A stretch of 64,000 bases of DNA, taken from positions 1 to 64,000 of IMG/VR virus record IMGVR_UViG_3300046660_000488. One strand, 5' to 3'. The notes beneath the pieces are model-generated. The model made no database searches and had not been told where the DNA came from. It saw only the letters and a program-made list of their open reading frames with translations. The position numbers and the translations under genes are program-made. The first letter of the stretch is position 1, and every line of letters starts with the position of its first letter. This document shows, one piece after another, positions 38,347 through 52,205 of the stretch.

Positions 38347-40176
38347 ATGGGCATGGTCTATCGCGGCGGTTTCCGCACCATTACGGGTCTCACGCACCCC
38401 TCGCCGGTTCCGGGCGTGACTTCGCGTTTCATCCCCAACGGCATCGGCTTCCGTCCGGGTGGCGGCCAAGTGATGGCCACGTGCAGCAACATGACCGCAG
38501 TCGGTTACATTGCCAACGGCCCGAAGGTCAACGGCACGGTCAACAACTTCGACGGCAAGGTTGACATCTATCAGACCGACGTTGATGGCGCCATCGTCAG
38601 CAAGATCGTCGAGATCACCCCGGACCCGAACACCTTCTATGCCAAGGCTGTTCCGCAGGGCATCTGGTTCTCGCCTGACTCCAACTACATCGCCATCAAA
38701 TGGTCGATCACCGGCAACACAGCAGCAACCGGCATCTATGTCTACAGCCGTAGCAACGCCGACTTCACGCTGTCGCAGTTCATCCAGTATGGCAACTCGC
38801 TCATCTGGCATTCCAACAGCATCAACTTCCTCGTCACGCGCACGACCGGCCAAGGCTATCCGCAGATCGGCCGCGCTGATCTTGGCGCTCCGCTGACCAC
38901 GCTGGCCAATGCTTCGCCGACGCTGAACCTTGGCATCCAAGGCTTCCAGTGGGCATGGTGTGGTGATGACCTGCTCGGCGTCTATGCCGACTCGGTTGAC
39001 GCCAGCAAGAACAAGCTGGTGACCTATCGCAAGGGCGCGGCCAATGCCGTCAGCGCAACCCGCCTGTCGTATGGCGCTTTGGTTCTGGGCGGCGCGGGCA
39101 ACACACGCATTCTGGGCCTAAACGAAACCAACCGCGTCGTGCTGTACGGACCGAACGCGGCCATCAACTTGATCAATGACTACAACTACGCCAACGGCGT
39201 GCTGACCGCGCGTCCGGGTCCTTCGGTCAAGAGCGCGACGACCTACGGCGCCATCAGCTACTCGAAGACCAAGAAGCGCATCATCATGGACAACGGGACC
39301 GAAACCCGCATCTTCCAAGATGTGGGCGGCGTGTTCACCTCAGTGTCCAGCAGCAAGATCGCGGTCGATTACGGCGCGGTCGTAGACATCAAGCAGAACG
39401 AAACGTCTGGTGCTGTCATGGTGCTTGGTACGGATGAAATCACGACCTACCAAATCCCCAGCGTCGGTTTCTCGCCGGTCAACAACACCAAGCGCACCGG
39501 CGCCAACCAGTTGATGTACTCGTGGGATTTCCAGACCAACATCAACCCGACCGTCGAGACCAGCTTCGGCTCAGCACCGACCATGGTGGTCAAGGGTTCG
39601 CCGACCATCGCTCCGGCGCCGGGCAACGCGGGCAAGAACGCGCTCTATCTGGGCACGGCTGGCGTGGACATGATCGCCCTGCCGCGTCAACGCGATCTGG
39701 AGTTCATGTACAAGGCCTACACGCTGGAATTCTGGGTCTACCAGATCGCCAAGACGGCTCCGGGCATGATCATCGGCGACTCGGCCAACCGTGGCCTGCA
39801 ATTCACCAGCAGCAGCAGCACGTCTTCGACTGTTCAGGTCTCCACGCTCGGCCAGACTTCCACGTCGGCCGGTTGGTCCAGCAATGGCATCACGGTCAAC
39901 AAGTGGCACTTCGTGTCCATCGTCATGAACGGCACGACGCTGACGACTTACCTCAATGGCTATCAGGGATCGGGCACGACGGTGTCGATGCTTCCGTTCA
40001 ACGGCACATCCTACTATCCGTCTGATCTTGACTGGGCTTATTTCTGCCTTGGCGGCAAGGTCAACGCTGACGGCTCGGTGGCCGGTAGCGGCTTCAAGGG
40101 CTATCTGCGCGGCGTGAAGCTCTACAACTACGCCAAGTCCTACACCGGCATCCCGTTCGCTCTGCCGACGTTCTAA
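38347..40176 (+). CDS. tail fibre / receptor-binding-like protein (beta-rich, C-terminal LamG domain)
   Basis: TAAATA at 38312; FSPDSNYIA propeller-like blade; YTLEFWVY...WHFVSIV...YLNG...F.GYL. Confidence 0.75.
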   Translation: MGMVYRGGFRTITGLTHPSPVPGVTSRFIPNGIGFRPGGGQVMATCSNMTAVGYIANGPKVNGTVNNFDGKVDIYQTDVDGAIVSKIVEITPDPNTFYAKAVPQGIWFSPDSNYIAIKWSITGNTAATGIYVYSRSNADFTLSQFIQYGNSLIWHSNSINFLVTRTTGQGYPQIGRADLGAPLTTLANASPTLNLGIQGFQWAWCGDDLLGVYADSVDASKNKLVTYRKGAANAVSATRLSYGALVLGGAGNTRILGLNETNRVVLYGPNAAINLINDYNYANGVLTARPGPSVKSATTYGAISYSKTKKRIIMDNGTETRIFQDVGGVFTSVSSSKIAVDYGAVVDIKQNETSGAVMVLGTDEITTYQIPSVGFSPVNNTKRTGANQLMYSWDFQTNINPTVETSFGSAPTMVVKGSPTIAPAPGNAGKNALYLGTAGVDMIALPRQRDLEFMYKAYTLEFWVYQIAKTAPGMIIGDSANRGLQFTSSSSTSSTVQVSTLGQTSTSAGWSSNGITVNKWHFVSIVMNGTTLTTYLNGYQGSGTTVSMLPFNGTSYYPSDLDWAYFCLGGKVNADGSVAGSGFKGYLRGVKLYNYAKSYTGIPFALPTF

Positions 40177-40182
40177 ACAAGC

Positions 40183-40217
40183 AAAGGCCCGCTGGTAATT
40201 ACTCCAGCGGGCCGTTT
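40183..40217. terminator. intrinsic terminator between convergent units
   Basis: AAAGGCCCGCTGG-taattact-CCAGCGGGCCGTTT. Confidence 0.75.
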
Positions 40218-40390
40218 GCCGTCTCACTCTGCTATATTGCCGGTTCCGTCTCTCGGATGCTCCGGCCGGAGCATTCCGAGGTTCTTCACCACTATGCGCT
40301 GGAGGGAGTCGAACCCTTCAGCTTCCAGACTTGCACTGCGCTTCAAGCAGAACCCTACTACCGTTCAGGTGGGTGACCTCGTAGACAAGC
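40218..40390 (-). ncRNA. candidate tRNA-like ncRNA
   Basis: TTGCAC-N17-TATATG promoter; paired termini; D-like, anticodon-like and AGGG-TTCGACT-CCCT T-arm hairpins; no CCA end. Confidence 0.6.
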
Positions 40391-40521
40391 CTCCATATAG
40401 CACCACGACATCGTGGGTGCAACCCCTCTCGTAAACGAAAACAATACTTCAAAACTGTGCTTGACGTTCCAAGCACAGTGTAGTAGAAGCTTGTTCAACG
40501 TCATCAACACGGAGGCCTCTC

Positions 40522-40938
40522 ATGTCGCTCGGTAAAACTCTCGCCACCCAAGCTGACGAACGCGCCGCCGCCCATATCGCCGCCGAGCACGCCAAGTCCG
40601 TGGCCGCGCTGGCGAAGATCAAGGCCGACAAGGCTGCGGTCACCGCGTTTCTGGCCACCGTCCGCGCGGCCATCGAGTTCGCCGCCGATACCTCCACCAC
40701 CTACAAGTCGCCGACCACGCAACGAGAGCGCGGCGACGCCTTCAGCACCTATTCGTGGAAGGAACGCACCAAGGACGTTCCCTACGCCAAGGGCTCGTGG
40801 GAAGACCCGGCCAGCCCCTACTATCCCGAGTGGAAGGAATTCGCCGACTGGGCGACCTCGGAAGACCTGAACCCGCGCCTCGTCTACGAGCACGACGGCA
40901 TGGGCATGGAGTCGTGGTACGTGGTGCGGATCGACTAG
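40522..40938 (+). CDS. hypothetical protein
   Basis: GGAGG SD; TTGACG-type promoter upstream. Confidence 0.75.
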   Translation: MSLGKTLATQADERAAAHIAAEHAKSVAALAKIKADKAAVTAFLATVRAAIEFAADTSTTYKSPTTQRERGDAFSTYSWKERTKDVPYAKGSWEDPASPYYPEWKEFADWATSEDLNPRLVYEHDGMGMESWYVVRID

Positions 40939-42359: not shown

Positions 42360-42445
42360 GCCAACGTGGCTCAGTGGCGACAGCACCGGCTTTGTAAGCC
42401 GCCTCCGCAAGGACACCGTGGGTTCGAGTCCCACCGTTGGCTCCA
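42360..42445 (+). tRNA. tRNA-Thr(TGT) with long variable arm
   Basis: GCCAACG/CGTTGGC acceptor, loop TT-TGT-AA, variable hairpin TCC-GCAA-GGA, GTGGG-TTCGAGT-CCCAC, T-CCA. Confidence 0.9.
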
Positions 42446-48109: not shown

Positions 48110-48643
48110 CGGCTGACCGTGCCAGAGTGGCTAATTTTGGTCAACCAAAACGAAACGAGCCCGCCTGTGTTAAACGGCGGGCTCTGGTCTCAAATGGTTA
48201 AAATATATGAGTTGCCAACGCGAGGCTGGCGGTTGGACCATGCACCTGTGGCCATGGCCCCTGTTGAAATAAGGGTCAAAAATTTTTTAAGTTTCAAAAA
48301 AGCTGTAACCAGCCCCGAGTACTATTTAGTGCCCTAACGTCGTGATTTGCAAGATGTTTCTTTAGATCGCCGAGCAAAGATAGCCGATAAGCTGGACGAT
48401 CAACCAGACTGCAAAGAAGAAACTCGCCGCGAATACCATCGCCAGTATAGCGATCAGCGCGAAGAGCCAATGAGTGAAGCCGATTACTACTTTACGGCCG
48501 CGATTGCCAGCAAGATGAGCCAAGCGAAGAATCCAATGAATGAACCGGTCTCTACCAGTTCGCTATAGTTGCGGTGTTGCATTTTTTCTTTCTCCATTTC
48601 GTACAGCGCTATTTATGCTGCACTGCACAAATGGAGACCGAAT

Positions 48644-51044: not shown

Positions 51045-52205
51045 ATGGCTTGAGACTACAGCCATAGAACAACCGATCTTTACCCAAGGGTGTTCTCAAG
51101 GTTGCGGCCCTGAGTTTCTTGGTTATCCACGGCCAGCCCACGTGTTACGGCAGGTCAGGTCGTATCGGTCCGTGTCGCCTTGTTCCTACCTCGCGGTAGA
51201 CGAGTGGCTTTTCTCGCGTCGCTTCATACTACTCGACACTTCCCATCCCTCCTGCTTCGCGGGCAGTTCACGGCTGCAACACCGTTAAGAAATCTTCCGT
51301 ATCGACAAGGGCGACTTTGCCGGTCATTCCCCTGCCCCAATTCTCTTGCGAGTTGGGGATTAGACACTTTTCGTATGAAGCCGGGTCAGGCTTGTGCTTT
51401 TGTTTTGAGGACGGTTTTGACACCGCGACCTACAGCTTGGAAGGCTGTCGCTCTACCACTGAGCTACATCAAATCCACTGGGACGTGCTGACCCGTTGCT
51501 CCATAAGGCTTTCACCCTACAGAATACAACACACCCCGTTCGTTTCATCCTGCTAAGACTACTCCGAGAAACCTTTGGACAACGTGCCTGAGCCCGTCAC
51601 CCTCGATCATGCCGCACGCCCTTTCCCGCTAAGGATCGAACCTTACGACTATCCGTTACTTTCTCCCATGGATGGGTTTGCGTGCCATGGATACCGGGTG
51701 CGAACCCGATTTGAGCTACCTTCCTCGTCGGTTAGGCAACTTCCTATCCCCTCTCGGAGACCCATGACCCCACCTTCCGGAATATCTCCCATCCTCTGGT
51801 AAGGCGTGGAAGACCCTCTCGGGAAGCTCGGACCTGTATAGGTGGACAGCCACCGAAGTGACAGCGGGGTTATGTGGACATACCCCCTTTGAGCCCATTG
51901 CTGGGCCTCATCCTTTACGGCGCTATACCGCCGTTCCGCACCACAAGTGATTACCGTTCCTCTTACGAATACCCGAAGGCATCGTATTTGACCCGGCTCT
52001 GCTTGTGGGCAGATACGCTCAGCACTGTGGATCGTCTTCTTGCGAAGGCCATCCGAAGAAACTAAAGCGCGCCATCCGAAAACGTCGCTACTTCGATCTC
52101 ATCACATGGTCTAAGCGGTCGTTCGAAACCACTTTGCTGCCTCTCGACAGCAGTACCAAGCCACGTCTCCGGAGCGAACCCCGTTGCCGTGCCGATCATT
52201 GACCG
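51045..52205 (-). ncRNA. GOLLD-like giant ncRNA (~1.15 kb)
   Basis: TTGACG-N17-TAAGTT promoter; no coding signal; dense hairpins with GNRA/UUCG loops; embedded tRNA-like element; 3' motifs (GTGTTGTATT...GCAAC, AAAAGTG, GAGTAG, GTGGATAA, GTAGTCTCA) recalled from memory as GOLLD-like, not searched. Confidence 0.6.
51403..51473 (-). tRNA. tRNA-Gly(TCC)-like element embedded in the large RNA (probably not a functional tRNA)
   Basis: Canonical D arm GCTC-AGTGGTA-GAGC and ACAGC-CT-TCC-AA-GCTGT; aberrant T loop; AT-rich acceptor; no CCA. Confidence 0.7.

What the first reader, a model, noticed from the sequence alone, without database searches (positions are those of the whole stretch)
40183..40422. 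tRNA-like ncRNA with closed ends and no CCA
Seen on the minus strand: TTGCAC-N17-TATATG promoter. 5' GCTTGTCTAC pairs imperfectly with 3' GTGAGACGGC. Inner GAGGT/ACCTC and CACC/GGTG stems enclose a D-like hairpin (CCT-GAACGGTAGT-AGG), CTGC-TTGAAGC-GCAG (GAA at the anticodon position) and a canonical T arm AGGG-TTCGACT-CCCT. An 18-nt perfect palindrome (40257-74) and a terminator follow. Known: bacterial Y RNAs (YrlA) are tRNA mimics with a long terminal stem, but their arm order differs and no Ro60 gene lies in this window. Inference: an unclassified tRNA-mimic or decoy RNA.
Basis: partly seen in the sequence, partly recalled or inferred. Interest (0 to 1): 0.65.

Follow-up and report, generated by a model that had tools for sequence, protein, structure and literature searches.

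The report
Orphan tRNA-derived small RNA gene in megaphage
A 578-kb soil megaphage carries a one-off small-RNA gene of about 210 bases, with its own promoter and terminator, whose front half looks like a remodelled, non-chargeable tRNA; it matches no known RNA family, but with no relatives and no RNA data its function is unproven.

Summary
The window is the first 64 kb of a 578,292-bp megaphage with terminal repeats, 69 tRNAs, from a rhizosphere metagenome.

**Supported**
- The promoter reads better as TTGCAC-N16-CTATAT. It belongs to a promoter class enriched in this genome: 9 sites against about 1 in shuffles, and at least 3 of them drive tRNA genes.
- A minus-strand intrinsic terminator lies about 210 nt downstream, and no credible ORF lies between.
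- The T arm is canonical and sits on a stable extended hairpin.
- A 7-nt anticodon-like loop carries GAA, and a D-like loop carries GG.

**Not supported**
- The cloverleaf and "closed ends" are not favoured in the full transcript (pair probabilities 0.02 or less).
- The core folds no better than shuffles (z -0.19).
- ARAGORN, the Rfam tRNA, tmRNA and YrlA models, and every other Rfam family fail.
- There is no CCA, no Ro60, RtcB, reverse transcriptase or integrase gene in the genome, and no paralogue.
- No homologue turned up in 48 related phage records or in three collection scans.

**Verdict:** probably a real orphan small RNA with a tRNA-derived module. A non-chargeable mimic is my preferred reading; a decaying tRNA relic is the main rival. 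It is not YrlA. Related megaphages do carry YrlA-like mimics.

The parts
40447..40486 (-). Upstream hairpin followed by TTTTG on the minus strand. It looks like a terminator or insulator just before the promoter.
   Evidence: Inverted repeat I1, 17-nt arms, 82% complementary; sequence read.
40431..40454 (-). A+T-rich stretch upstream of the -35 hexamer, resembling an UP element.
   Evidence: Read; the genome as a whole is 59% G+C. The role is inferred.
40417..40422 (-). -35 hexamer TTGCAC.
   Evidence: It is part of the pattern TTG[AC][AC]N-N16/17-CTA[AT]AT, found 9 times in the genome against a mean of 0.95 in shuffles.
40395..40400 (-). -10 hexamer CTATAT, 16-nt spacer.
   Evidence: It matches the rhizobial sigma-70 consensus CTTGAC-N17-CTATAT (PMC2873474). 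Sister promoters in this genome sit just upstream of tRNA genes (103565, 123267, 262238).
40178..40390 (-). Predicted primary transcript of about 213 nt. The start is inferred at 5-9 nt after the -10 hexamer, and the end in the U tract.
   Evidence: Promoter and terminator positions. No ORF with a plausible start or ribosome-binding site. Expression could not be tested: the only run holding this DNA is a DNA run.
40276..40380 (-). tRNA-like core: a bulged 9-bp closing stem, a D-like hairpin, an anticodon-like hairpin and an extended T hairpin, forming a four-way junction.
   Evidence: Minimum-energy fold of the isolated core, but z is -0.19 and pair probabilities in the full transcript are 0.02 or less. 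Post-hoc shuffle test: 38 of 5000.
40354..40369 (-). D-arm-like hairpin CCUG / AACGGUAG / UAGG, with GG in the loop.
   Evidence: Weak: 4 bp including one G-U; pair probability about 0.014 in the full-length fold.
40333..40353 (-). Anticodon-arm-like hairpin. The inner stem is CUGC/GCAG and the 7-nt loop is UUGAAGC (U33, GAA, G37 in tRNA numbering). GAA lies at 40344-40342.
   Evidence: The stem CUGC/GCAG is the same as in the phage's tRNA-Phe(GAA) at 518519-518595; 12 of 17 arm positions are identical.
40292..40328 (-). Extended T hairpin. The canonical T arm (AGGG-UUCGACU-CCCU, 40303-40317) is stacked on GCUG/CAGC and then CUG/UAG, separated by internal loops.
   Evidence: Pair probabilities 0.93-0.99. 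Listed in the T-arm census of the genome.
40252..40280 (-). 12-bp hairpin with one bulged A, built on the 18-nt perfect palindrome at 40257-40274.
   Evidence: I5; -20.6 kcal/mol, z -2.9. Its base overlaps the 3' strand of the closing stem.
40176..40213 (-). Intrinsic terminator: a 10-bp G+C-rich stem and then TTTGCTTGTT. An upstream A tract makes it weakly bidirectional for the convergent + strand gene that ends at 40176.
   Evidence: flags the minus strand only; one search gives z -5.5.

Best explanation
This is an independently transcribed phage small RNA of about 210 nt on the minus strand. It is read from a host-type sigma-70 promoter and ended by its own intrinsic terminator.

Its 5' half is a remodelled tRNA. 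It keeps an intact T arm, a 7-nt anticodon-type loop carrying GAA on a stem like that of the phage's own tRNA-Phe, and a GG-containing D-like loop. It has lost what a decoding tRNA needs:
- It has no CCA.
- It has no free acceptor end.
- Twelve extra bases separate the T stem from the closing stem.
- The T helix is lengthened.

It therefore cannot be charged. The proposed (inferred) mechanism is that it acts as a tRNA look-alike that occupies proteins which read tRNA loops. Candidates are T-loop or elbow readers, and anticodon readers such as the phage-encoded PheRS-like enzyme or a host tRNA-cleaving defence nuclease. It would act as a sponge or decoy and would not depend on Ro60.

Shown: the sequence features, membership of the promoter class, the terminator, and failure of every known-family test. 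Inferred: transcription, the overall fold, and any binding partner.
For: **A transcription unit**
- The promoter pattern is enriched 9 against 0.95 in shuffles. Sister sites drive tRNA genes or face downstream genes.
- The -10 hexamer matches the rhizobial sigma-70 consensus, which fits the rhizosphere source.
- The terminator is oriented for the minus strand (z -5.5).
- There is no credible ORF.

**tRNA ancestry**
- The T arm is canonical and stable.
- The anticodon-like stem equals that of the phage's tRNA-Phe.
- The element's own covariance model finds ordinary tRNAs as its best foreign hits.
- The loops are canonical while the helices carry insertions, which argues against random decay. 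The co-occurrence test gave 38 of 5000.

**Not a decoding tRNA**
- ARAGORN and the Rfam tRNA and tmRNA models fail.
- 64 of the 69 phage tRNAs encode CCA and this element does not.

**Context**
- The phage encodes a PheRS-like gene at 520441-521112.
- Related megaphages carry YrlA-like tRNA mimics.
- This genome holds other non-canonical tRNA-like modules at 455-459 kb.
Against: - There is no homologue anywhere, so no covariation is available. Searched: 48 related phage records with a covariance model, BLAST, and pattern scans of IMG/VR, JGI metagenomes and GTDB genomes.
- No RNA run holds this phage, so transcription is unproven.
- The cloverleaf is not favoured in the full-length fold and is no more stable than shuffles.
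- The T helix is 11-12 layers long instead of 5, which would stop a tRNA-like D-loop/T-loop elbow from forming.
- No binding partner has been identified.
Confidence: 0.4

Rival explanations
1. It is a decaying relic of a singleton tRNA gene, possibly tRNA-Phe or a long-variable-arm type. It still has its promoter and terminator but has no function of its own.
For: - The layout matches the phage's singleton tRNA genes: promoter, short leader, tRNA, terminator (for example tRNA-Val at 201479-201553).
- There is no conservation in any relative or collection.
- The tRNA models fail.
- The flanking genes are orphans in a variable region.
- The fold is no more stable than shuffles.
Against: - The T loop, the anticodon-loop format and the D-loop GG are all intact while the helices carry large insertions. 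Neutral decay should hit loops as well.
- The promoter and terminator are both intact.
- An added 12-bp hairpin and about 50 nt of 3' sequence are not explained by decay.
Confidence: 0.3
2. The tRNA likeness is incidental. The locus is an ordinary small regulatory RNA, or simply intergenic control DNA. It would then consist of a bidirectional terminator for the upstream gene, a palindromic protein-binding site and a stray promoter match, with a T-loop-capped hairpin used only as a stable structural element.
For: - Only the T hairpin, the palindrome and the terminator are individually significant.
- About 1 in 10 promoter matches of this pattern is expected by chance.
- T-loop-capped hairpins occur outside tRNAs in other genomes.
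- An 18-nt perfect DNA palindrome could be an operator.
Against: - The 13-base T-arm motif is tRNA-specific, and it lies on the same strand as the promoter and the oriented terminator.
- Anticodon-like and D-like hairpins sit in tRNA order and spacing.
- The palindrome occurs only once in the genome.
Confidence: 0.15
3. It is a Y RNA of the D. radiodurans Yrn1 type. The tRNA-order mimic is closed by a terminal stem, and it works with a host Ro60 (Rsr) protein.
For: - Arm order D, anticodon, T closed by a terminal stem is the Yrn1 arrangement described in PMC4201824.
- Relatives in the same megaphage group carry YrlA-like RNAs, one of them next to a Ro60 gene.
Against: - No TROVE/Ro60 or RtcB gene exists in this complete genome.
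- There is no RF02553 match.
- No GNCGAA(N)G motif is present in the 5' strand (read).
- The terminal stem is weak.
- The host is unknown.
Confidence: 0.07
4. It is an unusual but working tRNA-Phe precursor. It would be trimmed by RNase P and 3' nucleases and would receive CCA after transcription.
For: It has a GAA anticodon loop with U33 and G37, a canonical T arm, and the phage encodes a PheRS-like enzyme.
Against: - There are 12 nt between the T stem and the closing stem, and a 4-nt bulge in that stem.
- The T helix is extended.
- The tRNA covariance model and ARAGORN reject it even at lowered thresholds.
- The phage already has two normal tRNA-Phe genes.
Confidence: 0.03

Closest known systems
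YrlA-type bacterial and phage Y RNAs (Rfam RF02553; PMC4201824)
   Same: A non-chargeable tRNA mimic with a canonical T arm and a D-like arm, embedded in a longer RNA whose ends pair. YrlA-like modules occur in related megaphages (G002, G003, G004).
   Different: - YrlA has the arm order T arm, closed acceptor hairpin, D arm. This element has D, anticodon, T.
- No RF02553 match even at E of 10.
- No adjacent Ro60 gene, and none in the genome.
- No GNCGAA(N)G Ro-binding motif.
Deinococcus radiodurans Yrn1 Y RNA (as described in PMC4201824)
   Same: A tRNA-order mimic (D-like features, anticodon-like arm, T arm) closed by the pairing of the RNA's own ends.
   Different: - Yrn1 has a 6-nt anticodon-like loop and a strong Ro-binding terminal helix, and it is encoded next to rsr.
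- This element has a 7-nt loop, a weak terminal helix, a much longer T helix and no Ro60 gene.
- No sequence comparison was possible, because no Yrn1 sequence was to hand.
Canonical tRNA-Phe(GAA) and the phage's singleton tRNA genes
   Same: The promoter, leader, RNA, terminator layout; the T arm; the anticodon loop format; and the anticodon stem CUGC/GCAG, identical to that of the phage tRNA-Phe at 518519.
   Different: - It fails the tRNA covariance model and ARAGORN.
- It has no CCA.
- It has no 7-bp acceptor stem contiguous with the T stem.
- It has an extended T helix and an extra 3' domain of about 100 nt.
tmRNA tRNA-like domain (including two-piece alphaproteobacterial forms)
   Same: A T arm within a longer non-coding RNA in a phage. 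Huge phages often encode tmRNAs (my own knowledge).
   Different: - No tmRNA model match.
- ARAGORN calls a permuted tmRNA only at junk thresholds.
- There is no acceptor/CCA end and no tag reading frame.
tRNAs embedded in GOLLD RNA (RF02032)
   Same: The same genome carries a GOLLD RNA with an embedded, slightly degenerate tRNA 11 kb away. tRNA modules inside larger phage non-coding RNAs are therefore a theme here.
   Different: There is no GOLLD or other large-RNA match at this locus. The element is a short stand-alone unit.

Membership tests
tRNA (RF00005 / ARAGORN) | Covariance-model score at or above 29 bits, or an ARAGORN call. | tested here: not met
   No hit at the gathering threshold, none at E of 10 over 901 nt, none at E of 10 over the genome. 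ARAGORN finds nothing at default settings and only spurious intron or permuted models at lowered thresholds.
tRNA (RF00005 / ARAGORN) | A 7-bp acceptor stem contiguous with a 5-bp T stem, and a 3' CCA end. | tested here: not met
   Twelve nt separate the T stem from the closing stem, which also has a 4-nt bulge. There is no CCA, whereas 64 of the 69 phage tRNAs encode it.
tRNA (RF00005 / ARAGORN) | A canonical T arm (G53, T54, T55, C56, R57, A58, C61) and a 7-nt anticodon loop with U33 and R37. | tested here: met
   AGGG-UUCGACU-CCCU and UUGAAGC, read. T-arm census.
YrlA (RF02553) | A covariance-model match with arm order T arm, closed acceptor hairpin, D arm. | tested here: not met
   No RF02553 match at the locus at E of 10. 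All sub-threshold genome hits lie in tandem tRNA clusters. The arm order here is D, anticodon, T.
YrlA (RF02553) | Encoded next to a Ro60/TROVE gene. | tested here: not met
   No PF05731 match in the complete 578-kb genome. The positive controls rang, and relative G002 does have one.
YrlA (RF02553) | The GNCGAA(N0-1)G motif in the 5' strand of the terminal stem (PMC4201824). | tested here: not met
   Read. The nearest match is UACGAGG, with two mismatches.
Yrn1-type Y RNA | A tRNA-order mimic closed by a stable terminal helix that binds Ro60. | tested here: inconclusive
   The order matches, but the terminal helix is weak, the fold has pair probabilities of 0.02 or less, and there is no phage Ro60. 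Binding cannot be tested here.
tmRNA (RF00023, RF01849 and relatives) | A tRNA-like domain with an acceptor/CCA end plus a tag reading frame. | tested here: not met
   The permuted model appears only at 60-70% thresholds, and no tag was identified.
Promoter-to-terminator small-RNA gene | A recognisable promoter and an intrinsic terminator on one strand, with non-coding sequence between. | tested here: met
Promoter-to-terminator small-RNA gene | A detectable transcript. | not testable with these tools
   The only run holding this DNA is the source DNA metagenome; there is no RNA run.
Diversity-generating retroelement or retron RNA | A reverse transcriptase gene and a template repeat of the adjacent gene's 3' end. 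| tested here: not met
   No PF00078 match in the genome, and no repeat of 39500-40180 elsewhere.
Phage attachment site carrying a tRNA 3' fragment | An integrase in the genome and a tRNA 3' end identical to a host gene. | tested here: not met
   No PF00589 match. The genome is packaged with direct terminal repeats. No matching host tRNA was found in the GTDB pattern scan. Serine integrases were not searched for.

The most novel reading that the evidence does not exclude
It is a previously undescribed, Ro60-independent class of phage tRNA mimic. The RNA is tRNA-Phe-shaped and non-chargeable, is made early from a host promoter, and soaks up an anticodon- or elbow-reading protein. That protein would be either a host tRNA-cleaving defence nuclease (decoy) or the phage's own PheRS-like enzyme (regulator). 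It would be the functional counterpart in this phage of the YrlA-like RNAs carried by its relatives.
Probability: 0.12. Interest if true: 0.75.

Novelty: new variant of a known kind. Interest (0 to 1): 0.4.

Why it matters
Huge phages carry large tRNA sets, aminoacyl-tRNA synthetases and, as shown here for this group, several kinds of tRNA look-alike:
- YrlA-like modules with or without Ro60.
- tRNA-like units with clipped anticodon arms.
- A GOLLD RNA with an embedded tRNA.

A stand-alone, promoter-driven, non-chargeable tRNA-Phe look-alike would add a new form to that repertoire. It would also give a concrete object for testing whether phages use RNA decoys against host tRNA-targeting defences, or to tune their own translation enzymes.

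If it is only a dying tRNA gene, it still illustrates how tRNA genes decay or are re-used in megaphage genomes. As a single unconserved, unexpressed-so-far example, it is a lead and not a discovery.

Tried and rejected
1. **Standard tRNA, intron-containing tRNA, or tmRNA (permuted forms included).** ARAGORN and Rfam are negative. Lowered thresholds gave only spurious models.
2. **YrlA.** No model match, wrong arm order, and no Ro60 or RtcB gene.
3. **Protein-coding.** Only short ORFs with no ribosome-binding site and odd composition.
4. **Diversity-generating retroelement or retron.** This was prompted by the lectin-like gene just upstream. There is no reverse transcriptase and no template repeat.
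5. **Attachment site.** No tyrosine integrase.
6. **Paralogues in the genome.** None by BLAST, nhmmer or covariance model.
7. **Synteny route to orthologues.** Both flanking proteins have no relatives. A tblastn of neighbouring ORFs against relatives' loci found nothing useful.
8. **Covariance model of the core against 48 phage records related through the terminase.** The best foreign hits were an ordinary tRNA-Arg (14.4 bits) and a YrlA-like module in G003 (12.3 bits).
9. **Collection scans.**
   - IMG/VR returned unrelated T-loop hairpins.
   - JGI metagenomes returned 73 hits, nearly all a tRNA-derived repeat family from insect-gut samples (my reading) plus ordinary tRNAs.
   - GTDB genomes returned a multicopy element in Faecousia, a tmRNA 3' end and coding DNA.
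10. **A 40-nt similarity to a YrlA-like module of G003.** Score 39 against 16 +/- 2 in shuffles. It rests mostly on an 18-nt identical T-arm stretch, so I do not treat it as proof of homology.
11. **Read laying** was not used, because the only holder is the source DNA run.

Full report
**Where the window lies.** The window is the first 64 kb of a 578,292-bp virus record with direct terminal repeats, estimated complete. It is 59% G+C and carries 69 ARAGORN tRNAs and no tmRNA. Only one public run holds it: a rhizosphere DNA metagenome that is probably its source. No RNA run holds it. The element sits in a 345-bp gap between two + strand genes. Upstream is a 609-aa protein with a concanavalin/LamG-type domain ending at 40176. 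Downstream is a 138-aa orphan starting at 40522 behind a GGAGG site. Neither protein has any relative in IMG/VR or in the 5.8-billion-protein collection. The locus therefore lies in a lineage-specific region, and synteny cannot lead to orthologues.

The promoter is better read as TTGCAC (40422-40417), a 16-nt spacer, then CTATAT (40400-40395).
- The tool's E. coli-type scan does not flag it.
- The pattern TTG[AC][AC]N-N16/17-CTA[AT]AT occurs 9 times in this genome against a mean of 0.95 in 20 shuffles.
- Three of the other eight sites sit just upstream of tRNA genes. A near-variant precedes the singleton tRNA-Val. The rest face downstream genes or leaders.
- CTATAT with CTTGAC at -35 is the published rhizobial sigma-70 consensus (PMC2873474), which fits the rhizosphere origin.

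The hairpin at 40213-40186 followed by TTTGCTTGTT is called a terminator on the minus strand only and has a folding z-score of -5.5. It has an A tract on its 5' side, so it can also serve weakly for the convergent + strand gene. No ORF in the gap has a convincing start or composition. I conclude that a minus-strand non-coding unit of about 213 nt (roughly 40390 to 40178) is likely. This is an inference, not a demonstration.

**The tRNA-like part.**
- The T arm (AGGG-UUCGACU-CCCU, 40317-40303) is canonical. With its GCUG/CAGC extension it is the one robust local structure, with pair probabilities of 0.93-0.99 in the full transcript.
- The hairpin CUGC-UUGAAGC-GCAG has the tRNA loop format (U33, GAA, G37). 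Its stem is identical to that of the phage's own tRNA-Phe(GAA) at 518519; 12 of the 17 arm positions match.
- The D-like hairpin is CCUG / AACGGUAG / UAGG.
- Folded alone, the 105-nt core (40380-40276) gives a four-way junction as its minimum-energy structure. It has a bulged 9-bp closing stem and linkers of 2, 0, 4 and 1 nt, close to the 2, 1, 4-5 and 0 nt of a class I tRNA.

Support for that fold is thin.
- The core energy is no better than shuffles: z -0.19, with 87 of 200 shuffles folding as well.
- In the 215-nt transcript the cloverleaf is 4.2 kcal/mol above the minimum, and its stems have probabilities of 0.001-0.02. A rival long-range helix, GGUUCUG/CGGAACC, is preferred.
- The base of the 12-bp palindromic hairpin (40252-40280) competes with three closing pairs.
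- The T helix is 11-12 layers long instead of 5, which would keep the T loop away from the D loop.

I ran a post-hoc test with the T hairpin fixed and both flanks shuffled. An anticodon-format hairpin appeared in 5.8% of trials. Adding an adjacent GG-loop hairpin brought this to 2.4%, and adding a closing stem to 0.76%. This is suggestive, but the criteria were chosen after seeing the data.

**Known families.**
- ARAGORN finds nothing here at default settings and only spurious models at 60-80% thresholds.
- Rfam finds nothing at the gathering threshold, and nothing relevant at E of 10 over 901 nt. That covers tRNA, tmRNA, YrlA, GOLLD and all the rest.
- A genome-wide tRNA model search at E of 10 also skips the locus.
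- The element lacks CCA, whereas 64 of the 69 phage tRNAs encode it.
- There is no TROVE/Ro60 gene, no RtcB, no reverse transcriptase and no tyrosine integrase in the genome.
- The 3' end of the upstream gene is not repeated elsewhere.

This excludes a standard tRNA, a tmRNA, a phage-encoded Ro60-YrlA module like the one in relative G002, a diversity-generating retroelement or retron RNA, and makes an attachment site unlikely (serine integrases were not searched for). The YrlA paper (PMC4201824) defines YrlA by the order T arm, closed acceptor hairpin, D arm; by adjacency to Ro60; and by a GNCGAA(N)G motif. None of these holds here. The same paper notes that D. radiodurans Yrn1 has the opposite orientation, with an anticodon-like arm between the D and T features.

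**Search for relatives.**
- The element is single-copy.
- Through the terminase I fetched 80 related phage loci at 52-75% identity.
- I searched 48 of those records, including nine that are 350-608 kb, with BLAST and with a covariance model built from the core.
- The best foreign hits were an ordinary tRNA-Arg (14.4 bits) and a YrlA-like module (12.3 bits).
- Pattern scans of IMG/VR, JGI metagenomes and GTDB genomes gave nothing related.

**Context that bears on function.** tRNA look-alikes are frequent in this phage group.
- Relative G002 (608 kb) has a 479-aa TROVE protein with a YrlA-like RNA 1.1 kb away.
- G003 (425 kb) has what reads as three tandem YrlA-like modules and no TROVE gene: two have Rfam YrlA matches (35.5 and 13.9 bits) and the third I read by eye.
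- G004 has one YrlA-like module, also without TROVE.
- One G003 module shares an 18-nt identical T-arm stretch and a 40-nt alignment with our element: score 39 against 16 +/- 2 in shuffles. I regard this as weak evidence of shared ancestry.
- In the present genome, an ORF-poor stretch at 455.6-459.1 kb holds six orphan T arms. Two tRNA-like units there have anticodon arms clipped to tetraloops, and one tRNA-Sec-like core is enclosed by a stem of about 31 bp.
- A GOLLD RNA with an embedded tRNA lies 11 kb from the element.
- The phage also encodes a PheRS-like protein beside one of its two tRNA-Phe genes.

**Most likely explanation and its rivals.**
- I put about 0.4 on a real, stand-alone small RNA whose tRNA-derived module acts as a non-chargeable mimic. 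It would occupy T-loop or anticodon readers such as the phage PheRS-like enzyme or a host tRNA-targeting nuclease. The argument is that the promoter and terminator are intact and that the loops are canonical while the helices carry insertions, which is not what neutral decay predicts.
- I put about 0.3 on a dying singleton tRNA gene.
- I put about 0.15 on an ordinary small RNA or control region whose tRNA likeness is incidental.
- I put about 0.07 on a Yrn1-like Y RNA that uses host Ro60.
- I put about 0.03 on a working but odd tRNA-Phe precursor.

Transcript mapping, chemical probing, tRNA-enzyme assays and, above all, orthologues for a covariation test would decide among these.

**Verdict.** If real, this is a new variant of a known kind, the phage tRNA mimics. 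It is of moderate interest because it is a single, unconserved example with no expression data so far.

Noticed in passing
window 51047-51537 (-): A GOLLD RNA (RF02032) match over the full model: 129.6 bits, E 4e-35, just under the gathering score of 150, so the default scan missed it. A tRNA (51403-51473, anticodon UCC, degenerate T loop) is embedded in its variable region. ARAGORN does not call this tRNA.
   Followed up: partly
G000 455,600-459,100 (-) (L186 1100-4610): An ORF-poor stretch of about 3.5 kb with six orphan T-arm hairpins. Two tRNA-like units have anticodon arms cut down to tetraloops. One tRNA-Sec-like core is enclosed by a stem of about 31 bp followed by a U tract (z -6.45). 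A hairpin motif of the type TTGCCCGCATGGGCA recurs about eight times. This may be a large composite non-coding RNA or an array of tRNA mimics.
   Followed up: partly
genome-wide; in the window at 40422, 48352 and 50128 (all -): A promoter class, TTGAC/TTGCA-N16/17-CTAAAT(AG), occurs 9 times against about 1 expected. It resembles the rhizobial sigma-70 consensus and often sits ahead of tRNA genes. This points to an alphaproteobacterial host and marks likely early transcription units.
   Followed up: partly
window about 48150-48325 (-): A second small-RNA-like unit. The promoter at 48352 is followed by about 170 nt of A/U-rich and structured sequence and then a strong terminator (GAGCCCGCC...GGCGGGCTC plus a T run), all ahead of the next gene. 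It has no Rfam match.
   Followed up: no
L096 1440-1960 (G003:232529-233048, +): What reads as three tandem YrlA-like modules (T arm, closed hairpin, D arm), each preceded by a TACAGCAA motif; two have Rfam YrlA matches and the third I read by eye. They lie in a complete 425-kb relative that has no TROVE gene. The best RF02553 score is 35.5 bits and ARAGORN finds no tRNA there. One module resembles a permuted tRNA-Leu(TAG).
   Followed up: partly
G002:245866-247757 (-) (L099, L109, L110) and L098 1501-1579 (G004): The 608-kb relative G002 encodes a 479-aa TROVE/Ro60 protein with a YrlA-like RNA (30.7 bits) about 1.1 kb upstream, which is the classical Ro60/Y RNA arrangement. G004 has a YrlA-like module (33.9 bits) without TROVE.
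   Followed up: partly
G000 520441-521112 (+): A PheRS-like (tRNA-synt_2d) ORF of 418 aa lies directly after a tRNA cluster that contains tRNA-Phe(GAA).
   Followed up: no
G000 109999-110155 (-): Two adjacent tRNAs carry a CUA anticodon (ARAGORN labels them tRNA-Pyl). They are candidate amber suppressors and hint at TAG recoding late in infection. I did not examine this.
   Followed up: no
window 42360-42445 (+) and elsewhere in the genome: Several tRNAs that normally have short variable loops (Thr-UGU, Lys, Gln, Asn, Cys) carry variable-region insertions of 10-13 nt in this phage.
   Followed up: no
window 40215-40250 (-): The element's 3' domain contains a near-repeat, GAGACGG-AAC-CGGC and GAGACGG-CAAA-CGGC. 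It could be a seed sequence or a protein-binding site. It was not analysed.
   Followed up: no
L187-L209 (Faecousia MAG contigs): A multicopy element in Faecousia genomes ends in a T-loop-capped hairpin (GCTGTCGGGTTCGACTCCCCTCAGC) about 110 nt from contig ends. It is probably the structured end of a mobile element and is unrelated to this finding.
   Followed up: no
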